IMG/VR virus record: IMGVR_UViG_3300045972_000138
Span: 62,001 to 126,000 of that record
DNA length: 64,000 nucleotides
Strand: one strand, 5' to 3'
Under the pieces are notes generated by a model, which saw nothing but the letters and a program-made list of their open reading frames with translations, was not told the DNA's origin and did not search any database. Shown here piece after piece: positions 20,667 to 50,435 of the stretch. Numbering within the stretch: the first letter of the stretch is position 1; each line of letters begins with the position of its first letter. The position numbers and the translations under genes were made by a program.

Positions 20667-21890
20667 ATGGATAATAACATTAAGTGTTCGTTTTGTGCTA
20701 AAGATCGTAATCAGGTAGAAAATATGATCGAAGGTCCTGAACAGGACAATAGGTTGTTATACATATGCAATGAATGCGTAGATTTTAGTTTTAATGTATT
20801 ACACGAAGATGATAACAAGGTAATCCCGCTTAAGAAAAAGAAAGAAAAGATTCTTTTCCCAGAGCAAATTAAGGCTCACTTAGACGAATACGTTATTGAA
20901 CAGAATGATGCTAAGATTGCGCTGTCTGTTGCAATCTACAATCACTATAAGCGCATTCATCACAAATCAAAAGATGTTGAAATCGAAAAGTCTAATGTCT
21001 TAATGATAGGCCCTAGTGGATCCGGTAAAACATTAACTGTAAAAACAATAGCAAAGCTATTTGAATTACCATATATTATTGCAGATGCTACATCGTTGAC
21101 AGAAGCAGGATATGTAGGTGAAGATGCATCAAACCTTATAACTCGTCTTATTGATGCAGCAGAAGGTGATATTGATCGTGCTCAGCAAGGAATTGTGTTC
21201 ATCGACGAAATAGATAAGAAGAGTAAGAAGGGTGAATCATCGACCGTCTCACGCGATGTGTCTGGCGAAGGTGTACAGCAAGCATTGTTAAAATTAATCG
21301 AAGGTACAATTGTTAAGATACCAGATGAATATGGCGACGACGATGTTAGCTTTGACACAAAGGATGTATTGTTTATTGTAAGCGGTGCATTTGTTGGATT
21401 AGATGATTTAATTAGAAAGAACCGTGCAAAAACAAGCATAGGCATTGGTGCATCATTATCTACAACAAAGACTACATTCTCTGATACAATTAAATTGGTT
21501 GAGCCAGAAGATTTTGTAAGGTACGGATTAATTCCCGAATTTGTAGGCCGTTGCCCTATAACTGTTGTGTTCAACGATTTAGATGTTAACACAATGGTTC
21601 GTGTATTAAAAGAACCAAAAAACAGTATCGTTAGCCAGTTTAAAGCGTTATTTAAGTATGAAGGTGTTGTTTTAGAGTTTGATGATAAATACCTACAGAA
21701 TGTTGCAGAAACGTGTATTAAACAAAAAGTAGGTGCAAGAGGATTGCGTGCTACAATGGAGAAGAATCTTCAAGCTGTACAATATACATTACCGCGATTG
21801 GCTAAAGAAGGAGTAACCAAGATCATAATCGATGCCCTTGGTGCAGCTAAGTATATTTACAAACCTAAAAGAAAGAAGGCAAATGAATGA
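20667..21890 (+). CDS. clpX: ATP-dependent Clp protease ATPase ClpX
   Basis: CSFC...CNEC Zn finger, [50 protein letters not shown]. Confidence 0.95.
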
Positions 21891-22147
21891 GTAATCGTTT
21901 TAGAGATTCTAGAAAAACTAGAGGATTAACAGTAGAAGTACGTAATGACGACTTTGGTCGCGCACTACGTACATTTAGCAAGAAGATCCAAGACTTGGGT
22001 ACAATGCAAGAAGTTAAAGAACGAATGGGTTACGAAAAGCCTGCTGTAGCAAAACAACGCCTAAAGAAACAAGCCCGCAAACGCTGGGAAAGAAAAGTCG
22101 AAGAGATGATCTCTTTAGGCATGTGGCACAAAGACCACAAATACTAA
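21887..22147 (+). CDS. rpsU: Ribosomal protein bS21
   Basis: [18 protein letters not shown]...[23 protein letters not shown]. Confidence 0.85.
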
Positions 22148-22150
22148 TCT

Positions 22151-23731
22151 TTATTTCTTGTTCTGGGCAATAAATGTAATTAATGTGCTCATTGGTAATG
22201 ATTTAGAATATAACCATCCCTGAGCATATCTTACCTTGTGTGCCTTCAAGTATTCTGCCTGCAACCCTATTTCAACACCTTCAGCAATAAGAGCTAAATC
22301 TAAGGATTTAGCAATACCAATGATGTGGGTGATAACCTTGCTTGTAGCCGAGTCTGTACCAATTGAGTTAACGAATGATTTATCGATTTTTAAATAGTCG
22401 AGGTCAAAGTTTCCAAGATAGGACAAACTAGAATATCCTGTACCGAAGTCATCAATAGCAATTGTGCTACCACTTAGTCTTATATCCTTAAGATATTCAT
22501 TGACAACAATAGAATTAAGTAACTCGCGTTCAGTTGCTTCAATTATAAAATTATTTACATGTACGCCAAGTTTATCTGCAAGATTTCTTATCTTATCTGA
22601 TAATCTTGCAGATAAAATATCTGCAGAAGAAACATTGATAGCTATGTGAAAATCTGGATGATATTTAAATAACATTGGTGCGTCTGCTTCCACTAATTCA
22701 AAAACACGATCTGTTACCTTAGTGATTAATCCGGTTCTCTCTGCTTCCTCGATGAAAATATCAGGAGGTATAAATGTCCCATCTGATGTTCTCCAGCGTA
22801 TTAACGCCTCAGCACCTATGTATTCATGTGTAGTTAGATCTAGCACCGGTTGGTATTCTAAATAAAATTCATTGTTAATAAGTGCTCTTTTAATTCTACT
22901 TTCTAAAGATTTCTGTCTACGTGTATAATAAAATAGCACAGCAGCAAGAGCAACTCCGGTAATCCATCCTAGCGGAAAGAAGTAAGGTAATATTGCTTTT
23001 CTAGATGCAACAAGATATGTCTTAGGAATAGCAGCAACCATTATTGTTTCGAGTTGTTTAGTTTTACGTGTAGAAATTAAATATTCATCATCCTCAAAGT
23101 TATATGTGTCGCCTTGGTGCCTAAATGCCCATAATAACTTAGGATGATTCTTTTCTGATCTATATATGTTTATATCTGATGAAAACGAACCAAGAGCAGT
23201 ATCGCTAGGTATTGTAGAAATATCTACAACCTGATCTGCACTAACAGATATAGCGTATCCGTGTCTCTCTGTTATAATAGATGGTGTTTCTGAAATCTCA
23301 CTTATTACTGCACCTATACGCATTGAATAAGAATCGGTTCTTTTTATAATTGTCGTTTGTATAAGATATCCGTTACCGTGATTTCCTAGTGACGAACAAA
23401 TTAACCTATCATTTATTACATATCCTATTATAATAATCTTTGGATATTTTACTAACACAGATCCCATCTTAGCAATTTTTTCCGGGGAACATGGTGGGCC
23501 ACCTATTTCCTCGACCTCGTTACGAGCACCAGTACTTTGTAGTATATTGTCGTCCAGCCGTTCTTCGAGTATCTTGGTATATTCGGTTGTTTTTTCGTAG
23601 ATTGCTGATCGGGCAGTTTGGTCTGCAAGTTGATATGATGCAAACATGGGCACCACAGATACCAGTGCCATTGCAAGAAATAACTTAGGAGACCCCTTGA
23701 TAAATGCAAGTATTTGAGTAATGTGTTCCAT
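22151..23731 (-). CDS. CSS-motif membrane EAL-domain c-di-GMP phosphodiesterase (PdeC/YjcC-like)
   Basis: TM1, PPCS and LICSSLG, TM2, YQP, GAEALIRW, INVS, IEATE, DDFGTGYSSLSYL, KID, AEGVE, QGWLYS. Confidence 0.92.
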   Translation of the reverse strand: MEHITQILAFIKGSPKLFLAMALVSVVPMFASYQLADQTARSAIYEKTTEYTKILEERLDDNILQSTGARNEVEEIGGPPCSPEKIAKMGSVLVKYPKIIIIGYVINDRLICSSLGNHGNGYLIQTTIIKRTDSYSMRIGAVISEISETPSIITERHGYAISVSADQVVDISTIPSDTALGSFSSDINIYRSEKNHPKLLWAFRHQGDTYNFEDDEYLISTRKTKQLETIMVAAIPKTYLVASRKAILPYFFPLGWITGVALAAVLFYYTRRQKSLESRIKRALINNEFYLEYQPVLDLTTHEYIGAEALIRWRTSDGTFIPPDIFIEEAERTGLITKVTDRVFELVEADAPMLFKYHPDFHIAINVSSADILSARLSDKIRNLADKLGVHVNNFIIEATERELLNSIVVNEYLKDIRLSGSTIAIDDFGTGYSSLSYLGNFDLDYLKIDKSFVNSIGTDSATSKVITHIIGIAKSLDLALIAEGVEIGLQAEYLKAHKVRYAQGWLYSKSLPMSTLITFIAQNKK

Positions 23732-23773
23732 TCTGTATTTACCAATAAAGTACTAGTTTTTAAATGGTAGTAT

Positions 23774-23784
23774 TTGCATTGCAA
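23774..23784. promoter_or_regulatory. TTGC-N3-GCAA palindrome (PhaR-like, weak)
   Basis: TTGCATTGCAA between divergent EAL and hsp20 genes. Confidence 0.3.
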
Positions 23785-23824
23785 TAAATTCTATTATAAA
23801 ATATTATAATCACTATTTTACAGT

Positions 23825-23832
23825 GATAAATA
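23825..23832 (+). promoter_or_regulatory. Late promoter box GATAAATA
   Basis: Upstream of structured hsp20 leader. Confidence 0.6.
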
Positions 23833-23914
23833 AAATTGTAAGATGCTCATAGGGAGGTTTTACAACAGTATCCACTGGATACAAAATTTAGACTTGCTAT
23901 TAAAGGAGTTAATT

Positions 23915-24328
23915 ATGTCTATAAATCAAGAGTTTGATCGTTTATTCAACCACCTCAACCAGGTAGCTGTAGGATTTGGTCCCATTTTCCGTGACTTCCA
24001 ACACACAAGCAGCAACTATCCTCCACACAACATTGTTACTATTTCCGATAACGAGTTCAATCTAGAACTTGCTGTTGCCGGATTTAAGAAAAGTGAAGTT
24101 GTGATCCAGGAAGAAAATGGTATGTTGACCATCAAGGCAGATAAGGACACACAGAATGAATTACAACAATACCAGTACAAAGGTATTGCTAACCGTTCTT
24201 TCTCTAAATCTTTCCGCATTGCCGAATCCTTCGAGATTCAAGGTGCTAATTTAGAAGATGGAATCTTAACAATTAAGTTTGTTAAAAATGTTCCTGTGAC
24301 TAAACCTAAGTTGATTGCAATCAGCTAA
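23915..24328 (+). CDS. Small heat-shock protein Hsp20 (IbpA-like)
   Basis: NYPPHNIV, ELAVAGF, YKGIANRSF, ANLEDGILTI; start reassigned using AAGGAG. Confidence 0.92.
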   Translation: MSINQEFDRLFNHLNQVAVGFGPIFRDFQHTSSNYPPHNIVTISDNEFNLELAVAGFKKSEVVIQEENGMLTIKADKDTQNELQQYQYKGIANRSFSKSFRIAESFEIQGANLEDGILTIKFVKNVPVTKPKLIAIS

Positions 24329-24337
24329 CAACATAGG

Positions 24338-24366
24338 TTGACCTGCGCCCCGGGAATACGTATAAT
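24338..24366 (+). promoter_or_regulatory. sigma70-type promoter of clpS with inverted repeat around -10
   Basis: TTGACC-17-TATAAT; CCCCGGGAATAC / GTATTACCTGGGG. Confidence 0.75.
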
Positions 24367-24392
24367 AAGGTATTACCTGGGGTCTAACTATT

Positions 24393-24701
24393 ATGTCACA
24401 AGATATTGAAGTCATTGAAAAAATAGATGAGCAAATCAAGGTGCATATTCCAAATATGTACAAAGTGATTTTGCACAACGATGACACCACGACTGTGGAT
24501 TTTGTAATCCACGTGCTAACACGCATCTTTCACAAGCAAATGGAAGACGCACTGGTGTTGACACAAACAATTCACGAAGAAGGCCAAGGCATTGCAGGCG
24601 GCCCGTATACACGCGAAATAGCAGAAGAAAAAACACTCGAAACAATTGGATCAGCTAGGGCTAACAATTTCCCACTTGTCGCAACGTTCGAAGAAGTATA
24701 A
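24393..24701 (+). CDS. clpS: N-degron adaptor ClpS
   Basis: MYKVILHNDDTTTVDFVIHVL..IF, IHEEGQGI, YTREIAEEK, FPL. Confidence 0.9.
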   Translation: MSQDIEVIEKIDEQIKVHIPNMYKVILHNDDTTTVDFVIHVLTRIFHKQMEDALVLTQTIHEEGQGIAGGPYTREIAEEKTLETIGSARANNFPLVATFEEV

Positions 24702-24727: not shown

Positions 24728-25762
24728 ATGACACAAAATTTAATTCAAATTAAAGCATTCCTGGGAAAATATTATCAAGAGTTAGCATATTCTGTTCAGC
24801 AGGAAAAATATGCCAAAGCTAACCTGCTCAAGTTCTTTGAGCAACGGTTTGTTATTCAAAGTAATAAAGTGCAAATGATTGTAGACCCGTCCCTTAAGGG
24901 ATTGGTTGCAGTTGTAAACGGAAATGAGCTACTTGTAAGCCAAGAATTGCACGACCACGAATATATTAACATAACAAATTCTGCAGATTCTGGTAATTTA
25001 GGTAATAATCCTAAGAGTCTATATACACCTGAAATATTTTCGTCTATGGCATATTTGATTTGCCAAAATCATACAATGCTAACAATAGTAGGCGAAATCG
25101 AAGAACCAATCTACATACGTTATAAGTGTGAATTTGAAACATTTCAGAATTCTGTAGTTATAGTAAATGTGTCAGAAGGCATAGATGTAGAGATTGTTGA
25201 AGAATATGAAAGCTTTTGTGCTATAAATTCTGTAATAAACTACATTATCCAAGAAGGTGCTAGAGTAAACGTATCTACGTTCTACCAGAATCATTTATCT
25301 GCATTGTCATTCTGTCTACGGAATGTAATTGTGCAAGACAACGCAAAGTACAGTCATATATTGTTTGGTAAAGGTTCATCTAACGTATTAGATGAAACCA
25401 GAGTACAGCCAAACAATAGATCATCGGTTGAACTGCTAGGATGTATGAATCCGGGGCAGCAGGAATTCCACACAATTGTAGGTGTGCTTCCCGGTGCACA
25501 AGATTATAACTTTTTCTTAGATCATAGGCATATGGTGTCCGGTAAAGGAAGAACTACCTTCACTCCTCTTATCATAGGTCACTTACCGCCTACTGCACAT
25601 ACGAACGTAAGCTCGTTAGTGTTAGATCATTACGCAAGAGGCTTTTGGCCTGAAAAATCGGAGGAATTTTTATCACCTATATTAGACCGTGCTACATTAG
25701 AGAGGACTGTAGGTGTTACCCGTTTTTACAGTAACAAATCTAAGTTCTTGCAATTTCAATAA
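24728..25762 (+). CDS. SufD/SufB-like beta-helix protein, divergent
   Basis: IVNVSEGIDVEIVEEY, YIIQEGARVNV, VIVQDNAKYSH repeats resemble the SufBD beta-helix. Confidence 0.5.
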   Translation: MTQNLIQIKAFLGKYYQELAYSVQQEKYAKANLLKFFEQRFVIQSNKVQMIVDPSLKGLVAVVNGNELLVSQELHDHEYINITNSADSGNLGNNPKSLYTPEIFSSMAYLICQNHTMLTIVGEIEEPIYIRYKCEFETFQNSVVIVNVSEGIDVEIVEEYESFCAINSVINYIIQEGARVNVSTFYQNHLSALSFCLRNVIVQDNAKYSHILFGKGSSNVLDETRVQPNNRSSVELLGCMNPGQQEFHTIVGVLPGAQDYNFFLDHRHMVSGKGRTTFTPLIIGHLPPTAHTNVSSLVLDHYARGFWPEKSEEFLSPILDRATLERTVGVTRFYSNKSKFLQFQ

Positions 25763-26129: not shown

Positions 26130-26130
26130 T

Positions 26131-26546: not shown

Positions 26547-29381
26547 ATGGATCAAAAAAGCGAGTTTAGCAAATGGATGAAGACTATAGAATCTGCCTTA
26601 TCGGGAGAAACTAAAGTCGATGAAGAGATTCTTGAACAAGGGTCGTGCGGATGCGGAGCGTGGAATTGTCCAGATTGTTTCCCAGATGATAACAACGAAT
26701 TAGGTGGCCTAGAAGGTAAGCAGATCAAGGCTACTATTGTTATTCAGCCAGAAGAAGGTGAGTTCGGTGAAGAAATGTTGCAACAGCAAGGCGACGAAAT
26801 GCAGCAGCAGCAACAACAAGCACCGCAACAACAAGGTGTTGGTATGGCAGGAACACATCCTGTCGGTCAAGGCACATTCGATCATGACGAAGAAGATGAC
26901 TTAGATGTTTCTATGCCATTGTATGGCGAAGAAGGTATCGAGGAAGAAGGCGACGATACTGATGTAGAATTAACACAACAAAAATTACCACGTGCAGAAG
27001 GTGGCGGTGTTAAGTTAGGTGACATTGTTCAGAAGTATGTTCCGTTAGATAATGAAGACGGTGAAGAATCTACATTAAGCGATGGCAGCGAGCTAGACGA
27101 AGAAGGTGAAGAAGGCAACGAATTTGCACAAGATTCTAGCGATGATGCATCCGATGTAGCTACTATGCAAAATAATAACAGCACAGGCCCTGATTTTTCG
27201 CAGGAAGATAAAGATACTCAAATCCAGCAAATTATGAATATGCAGAGTATGGGTTTCAGTAATGCCAATGCAAGATACACACCAGAACAACTCGAGATGA
27301 TGGATGATACACAATTTAAATCTGTTCATCAACAAGTTTGCGGTGGTGTTCAAGAAGCTACAATGACAGCAGCCGATGACGAAGATAGACCAAAGCCTAC
27401 AAAAACAAGAACAAAGCGCCGTGATGACTTGGATGCATTCGATGATATATTAGGTGGGGGAAATGATCAGCCACTTGATCAATATAAAGAACCAGGTCAG
27501 CAACCAGGTGCCGATGCTCCAGCAGCAGGCCGTTTACCTAATATGCGTACAGCATCCGCACATGCAACACGTAGAGCAACAGGTAATATTGGTGTAGACC
27601 AAGAAATGATGGGATGGATGAATCGCATTAATCCAAATGCAGGCGCAGGCGAACAAGATATTCCGCAAGAACCAGTAGAACCAACACAAGATGTTACTGT
27701 TCGTAATGCACAAGATGTTCCTAGTATTATTAGCAATGCTATGCAGGCAGCAGGCACAGCATCGCCAGAATGGCACACAATAAACAACTTACCAGGTTAC
27801 AATCACCGCAATGTTCGTGGTATGGGTCGTAATGTGTTTGGTATGTTTACATCTACTCCGCTAGAACAAATTAAAACTATTGCCAATGTAAATGGACAAG
27901 GCCCGAATACGGATGCAGAAATTCGCGCTGTAGCTTCTTTCCTCATTAACAATGCAGACGACTTAGGTGAAGTACATTTAAGCCACGGTGAAGCTATTCC
28001 AGGCTATGAGCCAGATGTTAAAGAATATAGTATCGACGGTGTACGTTTCCACGTTGTTAGAGACCCAATGGGGCAGTACATCTACGCATATCCAGATGCA
28101 GATGCACGCATAAATACAAACAGAGCAAGATTAGGCGGGCAAGGTGGGGAACCACAGGCCCAAGGAAGATTACCGGGCGGTCGCCCACAAATACAACGCG
28201 AAGGATCGGAAATGAAATTTAAATTATCTATAACAGAAGCAATTAAACTTGACGACATTATAAGAGAAGGTTTAAGCGATATAGCGAGAAATGTTCTTAC
28301 TGAATCAGAAATTGACGAAGCAAAAACAGGTGCTGAATATCGTGCTCACCAAGGAGATAAAAAGAAAGCAGCAATGGCAGCACGCGGCGCCGGTATGCCA
28401 CAAGGTAATTATCCTCTATCACGCAGACTAGGCACTAAGCCAGGCGGCAAAGCATTGATTACTTGGATGCACAAAGGTCACAAGTTGTCAAATGAAGCAG
28501 AGTTAGAACCTGTACCATTTGATAAAGAAATTATGAATAAGCAATTTAAGTCACACCCTGATGACTTTGTAATTGTTTCTGCATCTAACGGTGTTGCAGG
28601 TATTAAGCCTTCTAAAGAACACTATGATCAGAAGAGAAAGACACAGCCAAGTTATAGCGGTGCAAACGACTCTACTTTGCCTTACCAAATTGTTGCGTTT
28701 AAAGACAACGGTGAGCAAGTTGATCCAACATTGTTACAGCCAAGACAGCGTGGCGAAGTTGAAAAGATTAAGCAACGTATGGGTAAACTACGTGGCGCAG
28801 ATATGCAAAACGAAGATAACATTTTCAAATTGCTACAAGATCAGATCGGTACATTGCAAACTGTATGGATTTCTGGTTTTGGCGGTTTCCGCGGTGATCC
28901 AGATTCGGTAAGAGAACCAACCGGTTCTGTTGAACGTGATAAAATGGCTAAACGTGCAGACATGAAGAAAGGTCCTGCAGACTTAGATCAGAACCAAGCA
29001 TTGAAAACTGTATTTAAACGTGTACGCCCTGTTATGAAGAAATTGGCTGCTGAAGCTATGTCTATGTTAACTCGTAGCGCACAACGCAGCATGAATGGCG
29101 GCGATATGGAAACAGCACAAAAGTTAATGACTCGTGCTACAAAACTAAAACAATTTGGTGCCATATTAGATACAACAGCTGATATTAATTTAGATGGTAA
29201 CTACGGTAGCAATACACGCGACTTTACAAATCAACTTCAAAATGCATTAGCAAAATCTGCAAATACTCGAGTAGGTACACCAGAGTACAAGGAATTCTTA
29301 AATGCAGCAGCCCAAGGTAACGCAATGGCCCTTAAGCCAGTACTTGATGCACTTAGAGATAATCTTGTAGAGTTGCAATAA
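26547..29381 (+). CDS. Large acidic late protein, putative head-internal polyprotein
   Basis: 944 aa, E/D/Q-rich, CGCGAWNCPDC motif, internal RBS+ATG at 28212. Confidence 0.75.
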   Translation: MDQKSEFSKWMKTIESALSGETKVDEEILEQGSCGCGAWNCPDCFPDDNNELGGLEGKQIKATIVIQPEEGEFGEEMLQQQGDEMQQQQQQAPQQQGVGMAGTHPVGQGTFDHDEEDDLDVSMPLYGEEGIEEEGDDTDVELTQQKLPRAEGGGVKLGDIVQKYVPLDNEDGEESTLSDGSELDEEGEEGNEFAQDSSDDASDVATMQNNNSTGPDFSQEDKDTQIQQIMNMQSMGFSNANARYTPEQLEMMDDTQFKSVHQQVCGGVQEATMTAADDEDRPKPTKTRTKRRDDLDAFDDILGGGNDQPLDQYKEPGQQPGADAPAAGRLPNMRTASAHATRRATGNIGVDQEMMGWMNRINPNAGAGEQDIPQEPVEPTQDVTVRNAQDVPSIISNAMQAAGTASPEWHTINNLPGYNHRNVRGMGRNVFGMFTSTPLEQIKTIANVNGQGPNTDAEIRAVASFLINNADDLGEVHLSHGEAIPGYEPDVKEYSIDGVRFHVVRDPMGQYIYAYPDADARINTNRARLGGQGGEPQAQGRLPGGRPQIQREGSEMKFKLSITEAIKLDDIIREGLSDIARNVLTESEIDEAKTGAEYRAHQGDKKKAAMAARGAGMPQGNYPLSRRLGTKPGGKALITWMHKGHKLSNEAELEPVPFDKEIMNKQFKSHPDDFVIVSASNGVAGIKPSKEHYDQKRKTQPSYSGANDSTLPYQIVAFKDNGEQVDPTLLQPRQRGEVEKIKQRMGKLRGADMQNEDNIFKLLQDQIGTLQTVWISGFGGFRGDPDSVREPTGSVERDKMAKRADMKKGPADLDQNQALKTVFKRVRPVMKKLAAEAMSMLTRSAQRSMNGGDMETAQKLMTRATKLKQFGAILDTTADINLDGNYGSNTRDFTNQLQNALAKSANTRVGTPEYKEFLNAAAQGNAMALKPVLDALRDNLVELQ

Positions 29382-31439
29382 ATGAATTTAGCAAGAAAAT
29401 TAATTGAAGCATTCTTAACGGAAGCTGCCTTAACAAAAGGTAGTCAACGTGTAATGGCTGATAAGAAATTAGTTGCAGAACTTGCTGCAACAATACGCGA
29501 CGATGTAATGACAAATCCATCGGCCTTCCCGCCCGGATCAAAGATGACATTTAAAAAGTCAACCGATCAGCAGTTAGCCGAGTGGTTCTTAGAAAGTATT
29601 GATAAAATCGAGGCCGAAGGTTACGAAGGCGTAAGATACTCACGCGATGGTGTAAACAACGACTGGATCGTTAGAAAATACATTGCCGGCGGCCATAGCT
29701 GGGAAGACATTACAGGTGTTATGAATATGAATCTTCGTGATTGGTATATTCTTAAAAATCGTAATATGCTGAATGCTAATCATACTAATGTTCCGGCATT
29801 TAAGGGTGTTAGAGATATTGGTTATTATATGACAGGCCACTACGGTGACAAATTAGAAGATTTGCGTAAGGCCGCTAAATTTGCTGCACAAGATAAAATG
29901 GCAAAGACAGTTAAACTTGTCGATAACGACGATTATAGAATTTTTACCGTATTAAATCGCTGGGGCGGTGTAGTTGTTGGTCGCGGAACACAATGGTGTA
30001 CAGCTAATTCAAACTACGATGGTAACTTCTTTCAATATGCTAATCGCGGAATGTTGTTTCAGATTTTTCCTTACAAGGAAGAGAAGAATGACGAATCGGG
30101 AGAAATGGAATTAGTTCGTAATAAGGCTGAAGCATATCAATTCGATGCCGGTGGTCCAAACATTAAGAACATAACAGACATTGATCCGAACAAAGAACAG
30201 TTCAAGAAAACATATCCGTATGTATACAGCGATGTGAAAGCAGCGTTAGAAGCTAACGCAGGCAAGATTGAAGAAGAAATAGCAAAAATGGCAGAAAATC
30301 CAATGTATGCCAATGATAAAGCTTTCGCACCAGTACCGTATGTAGTTTCGGATGAAGTTACAAAATTGCACAAATTAGTAGATCGTGGTTGGTTTACTGA
30401 AGATACACGTAAACGCCAACGTGCTCAGGCCGAAGAGCCAGCACAAGGCAACCCAACTATCGAACCAGCGCAAGGCGAGCAACCTGCACTACCGCCACCA
30501 CAGGAGCCACAAATGGAAAGTATTAAAGAACTAGCACAAAAGATGTTAGAAGATGTAACAATCGGACACATTACAAGACAATTCAAACCCGCTGGTACAG
30601 AGTTGTCTGATGCCGGTATGGATGCAGAGCAACCATATGATGAAGGCAAAATAAATCAATTAATGCAAACAAATGGCCTATCATGGGAAGAAGCATTCAG
30701 TACATTGTATGGCGAAGAATCTCAAGATTTAGAATTTGCTGAAGAAGTAGTAGACGAATGCCCACAGCTAGATGCAGCAAAAAGCAGATTAGCGCAGGCG
30801 TTAGGCGGAAATTCAGCAATGGAAGAAGATACACCACTACCTGCACCAGAAGCAGGATCAGTAGACGCTGGCGCAGTTCAGGCAGCAACAGGTGGCGGAC
30901 AAATGGCAGGTGGCGGAGGTGGCGGAGGTGGACAATATCCGCCCGGAACAGCACCATCAATGCCAGAATCAATACAACAAAAGGAAGTAGCAATGGAAAA
31001 AGTAGACAAAGACGTGGCAGCAATGCTTAACTCACTTAAAAAATATGACAAGCTAAACGAAAGCGTCTTAGGAATGGTAACATTGTCTATGGCTAAACCA
31101 AAGCTAGTCAGCGAAGAAAAAGATTTCTTCCACAACCCTAATGTGCCTGCAAATAAGCAGCTTAAGGCGCCACCAAAGGAAGTTAATCTTGATGAAGATA
31201 ACTTACCCGACGAGGAAGAGCTAGAAGAATCCGGTCCAGATAAGAGCAAGGTCCCTGCATTCTTACGCAAGGAAAAGGGCGGAGATTGGAAAACATCTAA
31301 GGATGATCTAGATAAAGAAGAAAATAAGAGCCCAACTACAAAGAAAGGCTTAGAAGATCTTAAGGCTAAGAAAGACATTAAGGAAGAAGCTGATCCAGAA
31401 GTAATGGAATGGATGAAGCGTTTTGCTAAGTTAGGTTAA
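29382..31439 (+). CDS. Late protein with GRGTQWCTA domain and acidic C-terminal modules
   Basis: 685 aa; internal RBS+ATG at 30513 and 30993. Confidence 0.75.
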   Translation: MNLARKLIEAFLTEAALTKGSQRVMADKKLVAELAATIRDDVMTNPSAFPPGSKMTFKKSTDQQLAEWFLESIDKIEAEGYEGVRYSRDGVNNDWIVRKYIAGGHSWEDITGVMNMNLRDWYILKNRNMLNANHTNVPAFKGVRDIGYYMTGHYGDKLEDLRKAAKFAAQDKMAKTVKLVDNDDYRIFTVLNRWGGVVVGRGTQWCTANSNYDGNFFQYANRGMLFQIFPYKEEKNDESGEMELVRNKAEAYQFDAGGPNIKNITDIDPNKEQFKKTYPYVYSDVKAALEANAGKIEEEIAKMAENPMYANDKAFAPVPYVVSDEVTKLHKLVDRGWFTEDTRKRQRAQAEEPAQGNPTIEPAQGEQPALPPPQEPQMESIKELAQKMLEDVTIGHITRQFKPAGTELSDAGMDAEQPYDEGKINQLMQTNGLSWEEAFSTLYGEESQDLEFAEEVVDECPQLDAAKSRLAQALGGNSAMEEDTPLPAPEAGSVDAGAVQAATGGGQMAGGGGGGGGQYPPGTAPSMPESIQQKEVAMEKVDKDVAAMLNSLKKYDKLNESVLGMVTLSMAKPKLVSEEKDFFHNPNVPANKQLKAPPKEVNLDEDNLPDEEELEESGPDKSKVPAFLRKEKGGDWKTSKDDLDKEENKSPTTKKGLEDLKAKKDIKEEADPEVMEWMKRFAKLG

Positions 31440-33388: not shown

Positions 33389-33985
33389 ATGCAAAATAGT
33401 CTAATCCCAATGGTTGTAGAACAAACTTCGCGTGGCGAACGTTCATACGATCTTTATTCACGCTTAATGAAGGAGCGTATTGTTTTCTTCCACGGCGAAG
33501 TAGAAAGCAATATGTGTAACGTGATCGTAGCACAGTTGCTATTCCTTGAAGCTGAAAATTCAGAACTTCCTATCAGTATGTATGTAAACAGCCCTGGCGG
33601 ATCTGTTTATGACGGATTGGCCGTATATGACGTTATGCAATACATCAAATGTCCAGTGCACACCTATGTAACTGGTATGGCAGCAAGTATGGGGTCGTTT
33701 ATTGCACAAGCAGGCGAACCAGGTCACCGCTATCTTATGCCACGTGCCATTACAATGATTCACCAGCCATCAAGTGGTACACGTGGTAAAGTGTCAGATA
33801 TGGAAATTGATTTGTACGAAAGTCTACGTATCAAGAAAGAGATGACAGAGCTATATGTTCAACACAATTCTAAAGGTGTAACATACGAGCAATTCCAGCA
33901 ATATATGGACCGTGATAAGTGGTTGACAGCACCAATGGCCTTAGATTTAGGTCTTGCTGATCAGATTGTTTCCAAGCGCGTCTAA
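33389..33985 (+). CDS. clpP: Clp protease proteolytic subunit
   Basis: [28 protein letters not shown] (Ser), MIHQP (His), MDRDKW (Asp). Confidence 0.95.
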
Positions 33986-34005: not shown

Positions 34006-34036
34006 AAAAAGCTAGTGAGGAATCACTAGCTTTTTT
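34006..34036 (+). terminator. Intrinsic (bidirectional-type) terminator
   Basis: AAAAAGCTAGTGA-GGAA-TCACTAGCTTTTTT. Confidence 0.85.
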
Positions 34037-34037: not shown

Positions 34038-34066
34038 TTGACTTTTTTGCTGCGTTGCAATATAAT
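34038..34066 (+). promoter_or_regulatory. sigma70-type promoter overlapped by PhaR-like box
   Basis: TTGACT-17-TATAAT; CTGC-GTT-GCAA at 34050-34060 in the spacer. Confidence 0.7.
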
Positions 34067-41189: not shown

Positions 41190-41340
41190 GGCCGAGGGCG
41201 AAGTTGATGGCATCAAGTATTCGGTTGACGAAAGCATTGTAAAACGATTAAAAGAATCGCATAATATAGATGCTATTCAAGAGATACAGGATGCTCTTAA
41301 AAAATTTAAAGAAAGCGAAAGGCTTAAAAATGCAAGTTAA
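41182..41340 (+). CDS. Small hypothetical protein (52 aa), not in ORF track
   Basis: RBS GAGG; fills gap, overlaps both neighbours. Confidence 0.5.
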   Translation: MNKAEGEVDGIKYSVDESIVKRLKESHNIDAIQEIQDALKKFKESERLKNAS

Positions 41341-41674
41341 GGCAATGCCAAAGAAAGTGTTAGTTACAGACTTAGAGCGTGGGTCGCGTATTGTTAAGGG
41401 AATTATTATTCCGGATGACAATGGTAAGAGTGAAGGTATTCGCCCACGCTGGGGTCGCGTATTCTCCATTGGCGAAGGCGTAATGGATATTCAAGAAGGT
41501 CAATGGATTCTTATTGAGAATGGCCGTTGGACTCGTATGCTTAAAGTACGACAAGAAGACGGATCTTACATTCAGTTGTGGGGCGTGGAATATCCTCAAT
41601 CTGTTATGTTAGTATCCGATACAGATCCGGAAACAGAAATTTTCTCAGAACATACAACAACACACGCATTCTAA
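41330..41674 (+). CDS. GroES-like co-chaperonin (Cpn10)
   Basis: KVLVTD...GIIIPDD.GK..GIRPRWGRVFSIGEG..DIQEGQWIL. Confidence 0.75.
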   Translation: MQVKAMPKKVLVTDLERGSRIVKGIIIPDDNGKSEGIRPRWGRVFSIGEGVMDIQEGQWILIENGRWTRMLKVRQEDGSYIQLWGVEYPQSVMLVSDTDPETEIFSEHTTTHAF

Positions 41675-45761: not shown

Positions 45762-45769
45762 GATAAATA
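45762..45769 (+). promoter_or_regulatory. Late promoter box GATAAATA
   Basis: Heads the 45788-50435 operon. Confidence 0.65.
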
Positions 45770-45787: not shown

Positions 45788-46396
45788 ATGTCGACAGATC
45801 TTGATAGTATTAAAAAGACTTTAGTGAGTATTTCTAAGGGTAACAATATCCTTGATACTTTGCTTGAGTTTGAGCGCACATTAGACAATGCAGAGATTTT
45901 TGCATACAAGAACTGGATTCTTGGCGAATTAGTGGAAGGTCCTATTATCAGTAGGTACTGGTATAAGACTGTATGGATGTATCCATATGCTATGATGCCC
46001 GATCCTGATGCAGGATTACGCCTAACTAAACTTGGTGCTAAAGTTAACTTTAGAAAAGGCACATTCAAGAAGCCTGTTAAAGTACACGGCCCCGAAGATT
46101 GGCAAAATCCAGAGTCTAAAAAAGCCAAAATGGCAGAACACGAAATATGGTTGGTTACTATTGACATGCCGTTAAAGTATATCAATCACGGTTTAGACGA
46201 ACTTGATGATATCATTGCACAAGACATTGAAGAAACTAATGCTGCACTTGCCGATGCGTATGAAGAAATGCCAGAGCAAGATATGGGCATGGACCAAACT
46301 GGTATGGATCAAGGCGGAATGGGCGGTGACATGGGTAGTATGGATATGTCTGGTGGAGCAGGTGGTCAAGATATGCAACAAGGTGGACCACAATGA
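45788..46396 (+). CDS. Conserved phage hypothetical protein
   Basis: LLEFERTLD...YAYKNW-like, GELVEGP, MPDPDAG; G/M/Q-rich tail. Confidence 0.75.
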   Translation: MSTDLDSIKKTLVSISKGNNILDTLLEFERTLDNAEIFAYKNWILGELVEGPIISRYWYKTVWMYPYAMMPDPDAGLRLTKLGAKVNFRKGTFKKPVKVHGPEDWQNPESKKAKMAEHEIWLVTIDMPLKYINHGLDELDDIIAQDIEETNAALADAYEEMPEQDMGMDQTGMDQGGMGGDMGSMDMSGGAGGQDMQQGGPQ

Positions 46397-47145: not shown

Positions 47146-47148
47146 AAC

Positions 47149-47364
47149 TTGGCTAAAGATGATGTGATAGTTACAAGAGGACGCATTACTGATGCAAGTC
47201 CTGGTGCCCGATTCAAAGTTACACTAGATAATGGGCATATTATGAATGCAGTAGTAAGCGGCAAAATCCGCAAAAACAATATTCAAATCATTTTGGATGA
47301 CGTAGTAGAAATTGAAATGAGCCCATATGATATGAATCTGGGCCGAATTATTTACAGATTGTAA
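47149..47364 (+). CDS. infA: Translation initiation factor IF-1
   Basis: MAKDDVI...FKVTLDNGH...VSGKIRKNNIQI..DDVV.IEMSPYD...GRIIYR; TTG start. Confidence 0.92.
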   Translation: MAKDDVIVTRGRITDASPGARFKVTLDNGHIMNAVVSGKIRKNNIQIILDDVVEIEMSPYDMNLGRIIYRL

Positions 47365-47376
47365 AGAAAGCTTAAC

Positions 47377-48210
47377 ATGAGCAAACGGGATTACTACGAG
47401 ATTCTCGGCGTTGCTAAAGGTGCATCCGAAGATGACATCAAAAAAGCCTATCGTAAACTTGCGATGAAATTTCACCCAGACCGAGTTGCTGAAGGTGATA
47501 AGGCTGCTGCCGAGCTGCAATTCAAGGAAGCAAAAGAAGCATATGAGTGTTTAAGTGAACCTCAGAAACGTGCTGCATACGACCAACATGGTCACGCATC
47601 TACTGATCCAAACTTTGGTAGAGGTGGGTTTAATCCGGGCGGCGCAGGTGGTCAGTTCCATCATACAGTCGACATCAATGAAATATTTGGTAGTATGTTT
47701 GGCGGAAATCACCCGTTTGGTAATATGTTCAATCAAACACGGGCACAACAACAGCGCCACGCAATTAATATATCTTTAGAAGATGCATATATTGGCAAAC
47801 AATTAAAATTGCCAGGCGGTGCAACTATTAATATTCCAGCAGGTGTGCGCCATGGAACAAGATTTATTCACGATAATGCAATATACGATATAAATATTTT
47901 ACAGCACCCTAAATTTAAAAGATCAAATGACGATTTATTAGTTGATATCGAGATAACTGCAATTGAGGCAATGCTGAGTATTGATGTACAACTTGACCAT
48001 TTAGATAATGCTGTGTTACAATTTACTGTACCTGCCGGTATACAGACTGGTCAGGTTGTTAGATTGGGCAGCAAAGGTATGAAAAATCCCGAAACCGATA
48101 GGTCAGGTGATTTGATGATTAGAATTACCGTTACTACACCAAAAAATCTAACACCTGAACAAATTGCATTCTTAAAAACAATGCAGCCTCGTAGTATGTT
48201 GACAATTTAA
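47377..48210 (+). CDS. Class B J-domain chaperone (DnaJ/CbpA-like, no Zn finger)
   Basis: [18 protein letters not shown]-rich linker, C-terminal substrate domain; no CxxCxGxG. Confidence 0.9.
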
Positions 48211-48218
48211 GGAATAAA

Positions 48219-50435
48219 ATGAGTACCAAAAGAGTTGAGAAGATGATTGAACGTGCAGTTAGTATTGCAAATGATAACAATCACGAATATATAACACTAG
48301 AGCATATTCTGCTTTCGTTAATGCACGAAAAAGAAGTTAACGAACTTATTATCGGTATTGGTAGCACACCTGCTAAAGTAAAGACCGAAGTTATTACATT
48401 TCTAGGTGACCCTGCACTTAAGAAGCCCGACGCACTAAAAGATGTTCCCGCTAAACGCACTACAGTTCTTCAACGAACAATGCAGCGGGCGCTAACTCAG
48501 CTTGTGTTTAGTGGGCGCAATGAATTAACTTCCGAAGCCGTATTGCTTAGTATCCTTAGTGAAGAAACAAGTCACGCATATTACTTCCTTGCTAAGAATG
48601 GTATTAGCCGTGAAAAGATTATTGCATTCTTGCGTAAGAATGATGAAAAAGCAGCGTCTGCTGAAGAAAGTCCGCTTGATTTGTATGCAAGAAACCTAAA
48701 CAAAGAGGCAGCAGATGGTACTATTGATCCTGTTATTGGCCGTGTTAAAGAAGTAAGAGACACAATTGAAATCTTAGCACGTCGTAAGAAAAACAATGTA
48801 GTTTATGTAGGTGAACCGGGGGTTGGTAAAACAGCTCTTGCGGAAGGCCTAGCTCTAAAGATTGTTGAAAAAGATGTGCCAAAAGCATTGCAAGACAAAG
48901 TTGTTTACAGCTTGGACATTGGTGCACTAATTGCTGGTACTAAATTCCGCGGTGACTTTGAAGAGCGCCTTAAAGGTGTGCTTGACGAAGTTAAGAAGTT
49001 GGGTAACGTCATTATGTTTATTGACGAAATTCATATGGTACTTGGTGCTGGTTCATCGACCGGTAGTACAATGGATGCAGGTAACTTACTCAAGCCTATG
49101 TTGGCCAAAGGCCAGCTTATGTGCGTTGGCGCTACCACATACGATGAATTTCACGAACACTTCGAAAAAGACAAGGCATTGCTGCGTCGTTTCCAGAAGT
49201 ACGATATTGTGCAACCGACAGTTGCAGAAACAAAGCAAATACTTGCTGGCGTACAAAAATACTACGAAAAATTCCACGGTGTTACATACGAACCCGGAAC
49301 AACAGATCAATGTGTTGATTTGGCCGATCGTTATATGAAGAACAAATTCTTCCCAGACAAAGCACTGGACATTATGGATGCTGCTGGTGCAGTAGCTAAA
49401 CTAGAAGAAAAACTCACTGTTACAGTGCAACAGGTGCTTGAACAAGCATCTAAGATTGCTAAGATCCCAATGGATATGATGGACATTAAGGCAAATGATG
49501 CACTTGCTAACTTAGAACCACGTTTGAAGAACAAGGTATATGGTCAAGACGAAGCTATTGTATCGCTAGTAGAAGCAATCTATATGGCTAAGTCTGGATT
49601 GCGTAATCCTGTTAAACCAATTGGTAATTTCTTGTTTACAGGTACTACTGGTTCTGGTAAGACTTACACAGCCAAGAAGCTTGCAGAATTGCTTGGCGTA
49701 AAACTTGTACGTTTTGATATGTCCGAGTATATGGAAAAGCATTCTATCTCCAAACTTATTGGTGCTCCTCCGGGATATGTTGGACACGGCGAAGGTAAGA
49801 TGGGTGAAGGTCAACTTATTGCCGAAGTAGATGCTAATCCAAACTGTGTATTGTTGCTTGACGAAATTGAAAAAGCTGCACCAGAAGTGTTTACAGTTCT
49901 ATTGCAAGTTATGGATGATGGCCGCTTAACTTCCAGCAAGGGTAAGACTGTTGACTTCTCCAATATTATTCTTATTATGTCTGCCAATGCAGGTGCAGCA
50001 GATGCAGAACGTAAGCGCATTGGTTTTGGAAATCAAGATAATAGCAGCGCAGTTGATGCGGAATTAAAGCGTCTGTTTACTCCTGAATTCCGCAATCGTT
50101 TAGATGCTACTATTAAGTTCAACAAACTTGGCTTAGAAGAAATGCGTATGATTGTTAATGCAGAAATCGAAAAGACAGAACTAATGTTGGAACCAAAGAA
50201 CATTACATTGACTGTTACATCAGCTGCACGCGACTGGTTATCTACAAACGGATTAGATCCGCTTATGGGTGCAAGACCATTCGAACGCTTGTTTGAAACA
50301 AAGGTTAAGAAGCCATTGTCTAAGGAAATCCTATTTGGTACACTTAAAGATGGTGGCCGTATTGTAGTAGATCAAGGTGGTGACGAACTTCGCATCGAAA
50401 CGCACCCACATATGCCTACAGTAACAATAGTTTAA
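48219..50435 (+). CDS. clpA: ATP-dependent Clp protease ATPase ClpA
   Basis: HEYITLEHILL, GEPGVGKT, GTKFRGDFEERL, GTTGSGKT, RFDMSEYME, GAPPGYVG, IGF loop, GARP. Confidence 0.93.
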   Translation: MSTKRVEKMIERAVSIANDNNHEYITLEHILLSLMHEKEVNELIIGIGSTPAKVKTEVITFLGDPALKKPDALKDVPAKRTTVLQRTMQRALTQLVFSGRNELTSEAVLLSILSEETSHAYYFLAKNGISREKIIAFLRKNDEKAASAEESPLDLYARNLNKEAADGTIDPVIGRVKEVRDTIEILARRKKNNVVYVGEPGVGKTALAEGLALKIVEKDVPKALQDKVVYSLDIGALIAGTKFRGDFEERLKGVLDEVKKLGNVIMFIDEIHMVLGAGSSTGSTMDAGNLLKPMLAKGQLMCVGATTYDEFHEHFEKDKALLRRFQKYDIVQPTVAETKQILAGVQKYYEKFHGVTYEPGTTDQCVDLADRYMKNKFFPDKALDIMDAAGAVAKLEEKLTVTVQQVLEQASKIAKIPMDMMDIKANDALANLEPRLKNKVYGQDEAIVSLVEAIYMAKSGLRNPVKPIGNFLFTGTTGSGKTYTAKKLAELLGVKLVRFDMSEYMEKHSISKLIGAPPGYVGHGEGKMGEGQLIAEVDANPNCVLLLDEIEKAAPEVFTVLLQVMDDGRLTSSKGKTVDFSNIILIMSANAGAADAERKRIGFGNQDNSSAVDAELKRLFTPEFRNRLDATIKFNKLGLEEMRMIVNAEIEKTELMLEPKNITLTVTSAARDWLSTNGLDPLMGARPFERLFETKVKKPLSKEILFGTLKDGGRIVVDQGGDELRIETHPHMPTVTIV

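What the first reader, a model, noticed from the sequence alone, without database searches (positions are those of the whole stretch)
20667..50435. Complete phage-encoded Clp proteostasis network including the N-degron adaptor
Seen: clpX (20667), clpS (24393), clpP (33389, Ser-His-Asp intact), clpA (48219, IGF loop), plus Hsp20, a class B J-protein and a GroES-like protein. They are dispersed in separate transcription units, unlike bacterial clpS-clpA and clpP-clpX operons. clpS has a host-type promoter, whereas the hsp20 and dnaJ-clpA units have late boxes. ClpX has IGI in place of the IGF loop. Inference: a self-contained ClpXP/ClpAPS machine that could redirect degradation to host defence proteins, antitoxins or sigma factors, or clear cleaved head propeptides.
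Basis: partly seen in the sequence, partly recalled or inferred. Interest (0 to 1): 0.6.

Follow-up and report, generated by a model that had tools for sequence, protein, structure and literature searches.

The report
Jumbo-phage Clp protease set, known kind
This pond jumbo phage carries intact genes for a whole Clp protein-degradation machine (ClpX, ClpA, ClpP and the adaptor ClpS) plus chaperones; the same conserved set is already annotated in Pseudomonas phage PA5oct and described for Agrobacterium phage Atu_ph07, so it is a real but not new kind of feature.

Summary
clpX, clpS, clpP and clpA are intact at the stated coordinates, alongside Hsp20, a class B J-protein and a weak GroES-like ORF. 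The window is part of a 237.6 kb IMG/VR phage record from a pond metagenome.

About 30 genes are colinear with Pseudomonas phage PA5oct, where all these genes are already annotated. All five near-complete relatives (347-385 kb) carry the four genes in the same order. The genes fall in phage-dominated clades and are under strong purifying selection. They are an old, vertically inherited module, not a recent host capture. The full set was described for Atu_ph07 in 2018, so this is a new member of a known kind.

The most likely reading is a working phage ClpXP and ClpAPS. The ClpS-ClpA N-domain model scored 0.88 against a best control of 0.00. ClpP is not the head protease, because relatives have a separate S77 prohead protease.

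- ClpX lacks the RKH loop across the clade.
- The ClpS gatekeeper Met is Phe or Val.
- An overlooked IF-1 gene precedes dnaJ-clpA.

Interest is moderate to low.

The parts
19010..20665 (+). 551-aa gene of unknown function, immediately upstream of clpX (1-nt gap) and probably co-transcribed with it. GATAAATA motifs lie at 18998 and 20615.
   Evidence: ORF list; no Pfam or PHROG hit; motif positions.
20667..21890 (+). clpX: AAA+ unfoldase with C4 zinc finger (C7, C10, C34, C37), Walker A/B, GYVG (148-151) and an IGI tripeptide (258-260). The RKH loop is replaced by a shorter acidic loop.
21887..22147 (+). Ribosomal protein S21 homologue, overlapping the clpX stop. PA5oct has the same pairing.
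   Evidence: Pfam 49.7 bits, TIGR00030 44.9 bits; PA5oct EST35_0256; S21 follows ClpX in 8 of 20 phage loci.
23915..24328 (+). Hsp20 small heat-shock protein. The ORF opens at 23843, but an AAGGAG ribosome-binding site favours the ATG at 23915. GATAAATA lies at 23825.
   Evidence: Pfam HSP20 61.4 bits, phrog_432; start context; homologue of the PA5oct 'heat shock protein'.
24338..24366 (+). Near-consensus sigma-70-type promoter, TTGACC-17 nt-TATAAT, 26 nt upstream of clpS.
   Evidence: 11 of 12 matches. It is one of 19 such sites in the record, 16 of which lie within 80 nt of a same-strand start.
24393..24701 (+). clpS N-degron adaptor. The pocket residues N29/D30/D31/T33/H61 are kept, the gatekeeper is Val35 (Met in bacteria), and the ClpA-binding residues E75/E78/K80 are kept.
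   Evidence: complex model.
24728..25762 (+). SufD/SUFBD-core-like protein, a conserved downstream neighbour of clpS in the clade. Role unknown.
   Evidence: Pfam SUFBD_core 35.3 bits; homologues in 28 related loci, checked as lying next to clpS in several.
33389..33985 (+). clpP peptidase. Catalytic Ser100/His125/Asp176 and the N-terminal gating segment are conserved. There is no long propeptide. Pocket residues are Tyr/Thr where E. coli has I90/M92.
34006..34035 (+). Intrinsic terminator after clpP, followed directly by another consensus sigma-70 promoter (34038-34066).
41270..41674 (+). Weak GroES/Cpn10-like ORF, homologue of the PA5oct 'chaperonin' EST35_0290, upstream of a clamp-loader-like AAA+ gene.
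   Evidence: Cpn10 23.1 bits against a cut-off of 21.1; PDB GroES E = 0.047; 39% identity to the PA5oct gene.
45762..45769 (+). GATAAATA motif 18 nt upstream of the first gene (45788) of the tightly packed run 45788 / 46393 / IF-1 / dnaJ / clpA.
47149..47364 (+). Translation initiation factor IF-1 homologue (TTG start), directly upstream of dnaJ.
   Evidence: Pfam eIF-1a 63.3 bits; present upstream of DnaJ-ClpA in 33 of 34 close-clade loci.
47377..48210 (+). Class B J-protein: J-domain with HPD at residue 33, Gly/Phe-rich linker, C-terminal domain, no zinc finger.
   Evidence: directly upstream of ClpA in 34 of 34 close-clade and 25 of 30 mid-distance loci, and also in Atu_ph07 and Phosso.
48219..50435 (+). 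clpA: N-domain, D1 (Walker A at 198, KFR loop at 242), D2 (Walker A at 475, GYVG at 519) and an IGF tripeptide (601-603). There is no ClpB middle domain.
50453..50478 (+). Hairpin plus T-run (AAAAAAGCCCC-GCAA-GGGGCTTTTTT) after clpA, a likely intrinsic terminator.
   Evidence: Read directly from the sequence. The scanner did not list it, probably because the T-run pairs into the stem.

Best explanation
The window holds a conserved, vertically inherited proteostasis module of a lineage of jumbo phages of roughly 290-385 kb related to Pseudomonas phage PA5oct.

The phage makes its own ClpP peptidase, two unfoldases that dock on it (ClpX through IGI loops, ClpA through IGF loops) and the adaptor ClpS. 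ClpS binds the ClpA N-domain and hands over proteins by their N-terminal residue. Beside these sit holdase and co-chaperone genes (Hsp20, a class B J-protein that would recruit host DnaK, a GroES-like protein) and translation genes (S21, IF-1).

The most likely use is to add protein quality-control and turnover capacity under phage control during a large infection.

Shown here: the genes are intact, conserved, co-inherited and under purifying selection; ClpS is modelled to bind ClpA as in E. coli; ClpP is not the head protease.

Inferred: the parts assemble into phage ClpXP and ClpAPS. Loss of the ClpX RKH loop and the changed ClpS gatekeeper may give a substrate range different from the host's.

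Not shown: which proteins are degraded, and when the genes are expressed.
For: - Family assignments and intact motifs.
- Thirty colinear shared genes with PA5oct, where ClpX, S21, Hsp, ClpS, ClpP, 'chaperonin', DnaJ and ClpA are annotated in the same order.
- All four genes present in the same order in 5 of 5 relatives that are at least 94% complete.
- Trees. ClpA lies in an all-phage clade with PA5oct (SH-aLRT 98, quick method). ClpX from phages and from proteobacteria are split by one branch (99/98). ClpP lies in a clade of 14 phage and 1 bacterial sequence (100/99). The ClpS close clade has 97/90 support.
- Synonymous sites are saturated, pN is 0.10-0.24, and dN/dS is about 0.12 or less.
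- ClpS-ClpA N-domain model: score 0.88, best of 3 controls 0.00. The mark was reached by 51 of 78 solved complexes and 2 of 108 mismatched pairs. Runs agree in at least 95% of contacts and the partner's pLDDT is at least 88. The interface includes the residues that align with E. coli ClpS E79 and E82.
- A dedicated S77 prohead protease in 5 of 5 complete relatives.
- DnaJ directly upstream of ClpA in 34 of 34 close-clade loci, and IF-1 in 33 of 34.
Against: - There is no expression or biochemical evidence. The source is a pond metagenome with no RNA runs.
- The complex model may pass from memory of the solved E. coli ClpS-ClpA structure, so it shows likeness, not binding.
- ClpX-ClpP and ClpA-ClpP docking were not modelled.
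- ClpA, ClpS and the ClpP equivalog model score below NCBIfam's curated cut-offs, so these are divergent members.
- The bacterial sample in the trees is Proteobacteria only, so a closer donor in another phylum is not excluded.
- One bacterial ClpP (L229, locus title Marinobacterium sp.) nests inside the phage ClpP clade, and one phage ClpP (G008) sits outside it on a long branch.
- The window's own record is only 62% complete and lacks the head module, so the argument about the head protease rests on relatives.
Confidence: 0.72

Rival explanations
1. Mixed machines. The phage parts work mainly by plugging into the host Clp system rather than as a closed phage-only set. For example, phage ClpS would redirect host ClpAP, or phage ClpX and ClpA would dock on host ClpP.
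For: - Docking elements are conserved with bacteria: the hydrophobic tripeptides, the ClpP N-terminal gating segment, and ClpS E75/E78/K80.
- Iyer et al. propose that phage ClpS brings targets to host ClpAP, and many jumbo phages carry only one or two of the parts (PMC7824862).
Against: - All four genes co-occur in 5 of 5 near-complete relatives.
- ClpP has clade-specific pocket residues, Tyr and Thr where E. coli has I90 and M92.
- Phage ClpS is modelled to bind phage ClpA.
- This rival does not exclude the best explanation; both could hold.
Confidence: 0.3
2. Targeted takeover. The machine exists chiefly to destroy particular host proteins such as defence systems, antitoxins, sigma factors or restriction subunits.
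For: - ClpX lacks the RKH loop that reads ssrA-type degrons in all phage-clade members examined, while it is invariant in 13 of 13 bacterial ClpX (function of the loop from PMC7652416).
- The ClpS gatekeeper is Phe, Val, Ala or Ile in 21 of 24 phage sequences and Met in 59 of 59 bacterial ones (role of the gatekeeper from PMC7966870).
- Both fit a different substrate range.
Against: - No substrate is identified.
- No anti-defence gene linkage was seen. The neighbours are chaperones, translation factors and nucleotide-metabolism genes, which fits general proteostasis better.
- The temporal class is unknown.
Confidence: 0.25
3. ClpP is the prohead maturation protease. PHROGs labels ClpP-like proteins this way.
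For: The best PHROG hit is phrog_94, 'head maturation protease'. PA5oct ClpP carries an ESI-MS/MS note.
Against: - It aligns over its full length with E. coli ClpP, including the gating N-terminus.
- It scores 104.8 against a cut-off of 120 on the ClpP-related head-maturation model, but passes the ClpP subfamily model.
- It is 198 aa with no scaffold fusion, and it is not near structural genes.
- Five of 5 complete relatives have a T4 gp21-type S77 prohead protease more than 100 kb away.
- The ESI-MS/MS note in PA5oct also marks enzymes such as ribonucleotide reductase, so it does not single out structural proteins.
Confidence: 0.03
4. Recent host-derived passenger genes, or an assembly chimera with bacterial DNA.
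For: The genes are bacterial-type families. Some small 'viral' contigs with clpS-clpA are really bacterial fragments; L100-L103 carry a ClpS that matches E. coli ClpS in the aligned region shown.
Against: - The best bacterial ClpA matches are only 44-47% identical, spread across many orders, with no close donor.
- The genes fall in phage clades.
- Gene order is colinear with PA5oct and with records that have terminal repeats.
- Selection is purifying.
Confidence: 0.02

Closest known systems
Clp/chaperone module of Pseudomonas phage PA5oct and its close relatives (MIJ3, Callisto, Paride and others; Arenbergviridae, Wroclawvirus)
   Same: - Same genes in the same order: ClpX-S21 ... Hsp20-ClpS ... 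exonuclease-ClpP ... GroES-like-clamp loader ... PhoH(-) ... DnaJ-ClpA-structural genes.
- Thirty colinear homologues at 25-64% identity.
- ClpX also lacks RKH.
- Sigma-70-type TTGAC/TATAAT promoters (PMC7318152).
   Different: - PA5oct has FtsH and a ligase between ClpS and ClpP. Here two large ORFs of unknown function sit there, and no FtsH is found in the held record.
- This phage adds IF-1 before DnaJ and a CSS-EAL gene after S21.
- The PA5oct ClpX loop is of normal length and its tripeptide is MGF. Its ClpS gatekeeper is Met.
- Relatives of this phage have genomes of 347-385 kb against 287 kb for PA5oct.
Clp protein set of Agrobacterium phage Atu_ph07 (PMC6102473) and Sinorhizobium phage Phosso
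   Same: - ClpX, ClpA, ClpP and ClpS are all present and dispersed.
- DnaJ sits next to ClpA (in Phosso with a peptide deformylase gene between), and in Phosso an sHsp sits near ClpS.
- A translation gene follows ClpX (IF-3 there, S21 here).
   Different: - Their ClpX keeps a bacterial-length GGRKNP loop and groups on the bacterial side of the tree.
- The Atu_ph07 paper also lists ClpB and further Clp-like genes for that phage.
- The gene order is not colinear with this window.
Bacterial ClpXP and ClpAPS (E. coli paradigm)
   Same: Same domain architectures and catalytic, ATPase, pore-loop and docking motifs. The ClpS pocket (N34, D35, D36, T38, H66) and its ClpA-binding residues are kept.
   Different: - The genes are not in clpP-clpX and clpS-clpA operons.
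- ClpX has no RKH loop, IGI instead of IGF, and a 5-7-residue insert in the zinc-binding domain.
- The ClpS gatekeeper Met40 is Val.
- ClpP has no long propeptide, and has Tyr and Thr at the I90 and M92 pocket positions.

Membership tests
ClpX | Score over the curated equivalog cut-off | tested here: met
   NF003745 479.8 bits against 359; TIGR00382 442.7 against 370.75.
ClpX | N-terminal C4 zinc-binding domain | tested here: met
   zf-C4_ClpX 43.4 bits against 27. C7, C10, C34 and C37 are present. There is a 5-7-residue insert relative to bacteria.
ClpX | AAA+ module with Walker A/B, GYVG pore-1 loop, pore-2 loop, Arg finger and sensor-II | tested here: met
   Alignment to E. coli ClpX chain 8e91_A. 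The residue aligned with Thr199 is Ser.
ClpX | IGF tripeptide loop for docking on ClpP | tested here: inconclusive
   A hydrophobic tripeptide is present but reads IGI. Of the 14 close-clade sequences, 12 have IGI, 1 IGF and 1 IGL; the two distant relatives have MGL (G005) and MGF (PA5oct). Docking was not tested.
ClpX | RKH loop at the pore entrance (recognition of ssrA-type degrons) | tested here: not met
   It is replaced by a loop 5-7 residues shorter and rich in Asp/Glu, while 13 of 13 bacterial ClpX have GGRKHP. Function of the loop from PMC7652416.
ClpP (peptidase S14) | Ser-His-Asp triad in conserved contexts | tested here: met
   S100, H125 and D176 are invariant across all aligned phage and bacterial sequences.
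ClpP (peptidase S14) | Curated family score | tested here: inconclusive
   Passes the subfamily model NF001368 (254.8 against 249) but not the equivalog TIGR00493 (228.6 against 308.6).
ClpP (peptidase S14) | N-terminal gating segment and hydrophobic docking pockets | tested here: met
   The N-terminus [17 protein letters not shown] is conserved. Pocket positions stay hydrophobic or aromatic, with clade-specific Tyr and Thr at the I90 and M92 positions.
ClpP (peptidase S14) | Tetradecamer assembly and activation by an unfoldase | not testable with these tools
   Needs biochemistry.
ClpA | Architecture of N-domain, D1 and D2 without the ClpB middle domain | tested here: met
   One end-to-end alignment to E. 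coli ClpA chain 1ksf_X, residues 5-718 against 5-734. Matches to ClpB are split in two.
ClpA | Curated equivalog score | tested here: not met
   TIGR02639 842.1 against 993.15. ClpA is still the best-scoring model (ClpB 684).
ClpA | ClpP-docking tripeptide in D2 | tested here: met
   IGF at 601-603, the majority state in bacteria (61 of 80).
ClpS | ClpS fold and family score | tested here: met
   Pfam PF02617 84.2 bits against 23. It is below all NCBIfam ClpS equivalog cut-offs (best 77.6 against 149).
ClpS | N-degron pocket residues (E. coli N34, D35, D36, T38, H66) | tested here: met
   N29, D30, D31, T33 and H61.
ClpS | Met gatekeeper at the pocket entrance (E. coli M40) | tested here: not met
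   Val35 here. Across the phage clade: Phe 16, Val 3, Met 3, Ala 1, Ile 1. Bacteria: Met in 59 of 59.
ClpS | Binds the ClpA N-domain | tested here: met
   Residues aligned with E. coli E79, E82 and K84 are kept. Model score 0.88, best of 3 controls 0.00 (mark reached by 51 of 78 solved complexes and 2 of 108 mismatched pairs); at least 95% contact agreement, partner pLDDT at least 88. A similar complex is solved, so the pass shows likeness only.
Class B (type II) J-protein | J-domain with HPD, Gly/Phe-rich linker, C-terminal domain, no CxxCxGxG zinc finger | tested here: met
   DnaJ 87.5 bits, DnaJ_C 78.2 bits, HPD at residue 33, linker 33% Gly+Phe, one Cys in total.
GroES / Cpn10 | Cpn10 family score and full-length match | tested here: inconclusive
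   23.1 bits against 21.1, covering only profile positions 2-50 of 93. PDB GroES E = 0.047.

The most novel reading that the evidence does not exclude
The phage Clp machine has a changed substrate range rather than duplicating the host's.
- ClpX has a short acidic loop in place of the basic RKH loop. It would then no longer read ssrA-type C-terminal tags and would favour a different, perhaps basic, class of substrates.
- ClpS, with a Phe or Val gatekeeper, would read a shifted N-degron code.
- The clade-specific ClpP pocket residues would bias docking towards phage partners.

Together these would give the phage a degradation channel that runs alongside host quality control without competing with it.
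Probability: 0.3. Interest if true: 0.6.

Novelty: new member of a known kind. Interest (0 to 1): 0.35.

Why it matters
Phage-encoded Clp sets are known from annotation, but I found no experimental study of them in the searchable library. Their purpose is therefore an open, modest question.

This window shows that the set is an old, syntenic and strongly constrained module of a widespread environmental jumbo-phage lineage, and that lineage has a cultured relative, PA5oct. The question can therefore be tested at the bench.

The clade-wide loss of the ClpX RKH loop and the changed ClpS gatekeeper give concrete predictions about altered degron specificity. If these hold, they would also provide natural variants for work on targeted protein degradation.

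Tried and rejected
- Megablast of 14 kb against GenBank phages found nothing; relatives appear only at the protein level.
- The search for a Peptidase_S77 prohead protease in the window's own record was blank and its control did not ring, so it was uninformative. tblastn with PA5oct head genes showed that the record lacks the head module. The question was settled in complete relatives instead.
- No FtsH and no further Clp/Hsp100 ATPase in the held 237 kb. The record is 62% complete, so absence is not shown.
- T4-type late promoter TATAAATA: 4 matches against 7.6 expected, not enriched.
- The generic sigma-70 scan is not enriched overall (53 against 52.7). Only the 11-of-12 sites stand out.
- No tmRNA was found by ARAGORN in the record.
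- No RNA runs hold the sequence.
- Expression timing of the PA5oct orthologues could not be retrieved. No supplements are held, and the 2018 preprint uses different gene numbers.
- Protein-atlas look-ups of the two large unknown ORFs gave no usable hit.
- Covariation between the ClpX tripeptide and the ClpP pocket was considered. The pocket Tyr/Thr is invariant in the close clade, whichever of IGI, IGF or IGL is present, so no signal could be drawn.
- The family scans left none of the key proteins open.

Full report
**What the sequence is.** The window is bases 62001-126000 of a 237,609-bp IMG/VR virus record that CheckV rates 62% complete. The DNA occurs in pond metagenomes, and no RNA run holds it. 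It has no near-identical GenBank phage. At the protein level, about 30 genes between window positions 17 and 51 kb are colinear with 168-196 kb of Pseudomonas phage PA5oct, at 25-64% identity. Close relatives in IMG/VR include four records of 363-385 kb with direct terminal repeats and a fifth of 347 kb that is 94% complete. This is a jumbo phage from an environmental lineage related to PA5oct.

**Checking the observation.**
- ClpX (20667-21890) passes both NCBIfam ClpX equivalog cut-offs. It aligns with E. coli ClpX with the four zinc-finger Cys, Walker A/B, GYVG, pore-2 loop, Arg finger and sensor-II intact.
- ClpP (33389-33985) aligns end to end with E. coli ClpP. The Ser-His-Asp contexts and the N-terminal gating segment are conserved, and only three residues precede the mature start.
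- ClpA (48219-50435) aligns as a single stretch with E. coli ClpA. It has the N-domain, both AAA+ modules and no ClpB middle domain.
- ClpS (24393-24701) is a clear Pfam ClpS and aligns with the E. coli and Caulobacter structures.
- Hsp20 is confirmed. The J-protein is class B. The GroES-like ORF at 41270-41674 is only just over the Pfam cut-off.
- ClpX does carry IGI where bacteria have IGF.
- ClpA's IGF is simply the common state in bacteria and phages; E. coli's IGL is the minority form.

**Transcription units.** The four genes lie in four separate units.
- clpX abuts a 551-aa upstream gene and overlaps S21 downstream.
- clpS has an 11-of-12 sigma-70 consensus promoter at 24338-24366. The record has 19 such near-consensus sites, and 16 lie within 80 nt upstream of a same-strand start. 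This matches PA5oct, which depends on host RNA polymerase and uses TTGAC/TATAATA promoters (PMC7318152).
- clpP is followed by a strong terminator at 34006-34035. Its own promoter was not identified.
dnaJ-clpA is therefore the tail of a tightly packed five-gene run that starts at 45788 and ends at a hairpin with a T-run at 50453-50478.
- The octamer GATAAATA is enriched: 16 in the window against 4.6 expected, with 0 of 100 shuffles reaching 16. In the whole record there are 56, and 36 lie within 80 nt upstream of a same-strand start. It precedes hsp20, the 45788 run, structural-gene homologues, and also clpX and PhoH.
- GATAAATA is a plausible phage promoter element, but nothing here shows that it marks late genes. 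The T4 late motif TATAAATA is not enriched.

**How widespread and how old.** Scans of IMG/VR found 222 stretches that encode ClpA relatives, and 20 contigs with close ClpS relatives.
- All five near-complete relatives carry ClpX, ClpS, ClpP and ClpA in the order X, S, P, A.
- DnaJ sits directly upstream of ClpA in 34 of 34 close-clade loci and 25 of 30 mid-distance loci. The same pairing occurs in Atu_ph07, and in Phosso with a peptide deformylase gene between them.
- IF-1 is present in 33 of 34 close-clade loci.
- The best bacterial ClpA matches are only 44-47% identical and are spread over many alpha- and gammaproteobacterial groups.
- In trees, ClpA falls in an all-phage clade with PA5oct (SH-aLRT 98, quick method). 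Phage and proteobacterial ClpX are split by one branch (99/98).
- Most phage ClpP form one clade (100/99). One bacterial sequence (L229, locus title Marinobacterium sp.) nests inside it, and one long-branch phage sequence sits outside.
- The short ClpS alignment gives only weak separation of phage from bacteria (88/0), but its close clade is well supported (97/90).
- Between the window and three relatives, synonymous sites are saturated (pS 0.64-0.85) while pN is 0.10-0.24.
- The set is therefore old in this phage lineage, inherited vertically and strongly constrained. One caveat: the bacteria sampled are all Proteobacteria.

**What it most likely does.** The simplest reading is a working phage ClpXP and ClpAPS.
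ClpS against ClpA residues 1-145 scored 0.88, and the best of 3 controls scored 0.00. In calibration, 51 of 78 solved complexes and 2 of 108 mismatched pairs reached the mark.
- The runs agree in at least 95% of contacts and the partner's pLDDT is at least 88. The interface includes the residues that align with E. coli ClpS E79 and E82. Because the E. coli complex is solved, this shows likeness, not proof of binding.
- ClpP is not the head-maturation protease, despite the PHROG label. It fails the ClpP-related head-maturation model, and 5 of 5 complete relatives encode a T4 gp21-type S77 prohead protease elsewhere.
- The neighbours are chaperones (Hsp20, J-protein, GroES-like) and translation genes (S21, IF-1; IF-3 next to ClpX in Atu_ph07 and Phosso). 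This points to support of protein synthesis, folding and turnover during a large infection, more than to a dedicated anti-defence weapon. The latter cannot be excluded.

**Differences from the bacterial machines.**
- Every phage-clade ClpX lacks the RKH loop, which is invariant (GGRKHPQQEF) in 13 of 13 sampled bacterial ClpX. In the close clade the loop is 5-7 residues shorter and rich in Asp/Glu. PA5oct and G005 have loops of near-normal length without RKH. Atu_ph07 and Phosso keep GGRKNP.
- RKH residues Arg228 and His230 contact the ssrA degron. R228A shifts specificity away from ssrA. [quoted passage not shown] A testable inference is that this ClpX reads ssrA-type tags poorly.
- The ClpS gatekeeper, Met in 59 of 59 bacterial sequences, is Val here and mostly Phe in the clade. 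This residue is known to tune N-degron selectivity (PMC7966870).
- ClpP has clade-specific Tyr and Thr at two docking-pocket positions.
- I saw none of these points in the two papers that discuss phage Clp genes. I cannot exclude that they are noted elsewhere.

**Novelty.** The complete set (ClpX, ClpA, ClpP, ClpS, plus ClpB and DnaJ) was listed and discussed for Atu_ph07 in 2018 (PMC6102473). Iyer et al. surveyed ClpP, ClpS, ClpA, ClpX, Hsp20, DnaJ and Hsp10 across jumbo phages (PMC7824862). GenBank records of PA5oct and its relatives annotate all of the genes. PHROGs has families for each. No experimental study of a phage Clp machine turned up in the library. The finding is real, but it is a new member of a known kind.

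**Limits.**
- There are no expression data.
- Docking of either unfoldase on ClpP was not modelled.
- The host is unknown.
- The window's record is incomplete.
- Taxon sampling for the trees is narrow.

Noticed in passing
window 47149-47364 (+): A translation initiation factor IF-1 homologue (TTG start, Pfam 63 bits) lies directly upstream of dnaJ-clpA. It is present in 33 of 34 close-clade loci and is absent from PA5oct. With S21 after clpX here, and IF-3 after clpX in Atu_ph07 and Phosso, translation genes sit next to Clp or chaperone genes repeatedly.
   Followed up: partly
window 22151-23731 (-): A CSS-motif EAL-domain (c-di-GMP phosphodiesterase-type) gene on the opposite strand is inserted between S21 and hsp20. 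It has a homologue in only one other fetched locus, so it looks like an accessory gene that might alter host c-di-GMP signalling.
   Followed up: partly
window 26547-29381 and 29382-31439 (+): Two large ORFs (944 and 685 aa) have no Pfam, PHROG or usable protein-atlas match. They occupy the position where PA5oct has FtsH and a DNA ligase.
   Followed up: partly
window 24728-25762 (+): A SufD/SUFBD-core-like protein immediately follows clpS. It has homologues in 28 related loci, next to clpS where checked. Its function in a phage is unclear.
   Followed up: partly
whole record (G000); in the window at 9599, 15300, 18998, 20615, 23825, 26507, 45687(-), 45762, 50505 and 59105: The octamer GATAAATA is about 3.5-fold enriched and mostly lies 4-56 nt upstream of same-strand start codons. 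It is a candidate phage-specific promoter element, distinct from the sigma-70 consensus sites.
   Followed up: partly
window 24338-24380: The clpS promoter overlaps an imperfect inverted repeat (CCCCGGGAATAC ... GTATTACCTGGGG) that spans the -10 hexamer. It could be an operator or an RNA hairpin.
   Followed up: no
window 12846-14315, 15971-16657, 17052-17729, 18027-18524: Upstream of the finding lie a SpoVR-like protein (524 bits), ThyX, GTP cyclohydrolase I and a QueD/PTPS-like gene. The last two match the queuosine/folate-type genes at the same place in PA5oct.
   Followed up: no
loci L100-L103 (IMG/VR contigs of 4-7 kb): These small 'viral' contigs carry adjacent clpS-clpA. Their ClpS matches E. 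coli ClpS in the aligned region shown, and one of them (L100) groups with bacterial ClpA in the tree. They look like bacterial fragments filed as viral.
   Followed up: partly
locus L229 (genome G025, title Marinobacterium sp.), ClpP at 2768-3436 (-): A bacterial ClpP next to an ordinary bacterial clpX groups inside the otherwise phage-only ClpP clade. This could be a phage-to-bacterium or bacterium-to-phage exchange, or a short-alignment artefact.
   Followed up: no
genome G004 (IMG/VR 3300037466_002980), positions 205165-205371: This complete relative has a second, weaker ClpS-family hit (44.7 bits) far from the main clpS.
   Followed up: no
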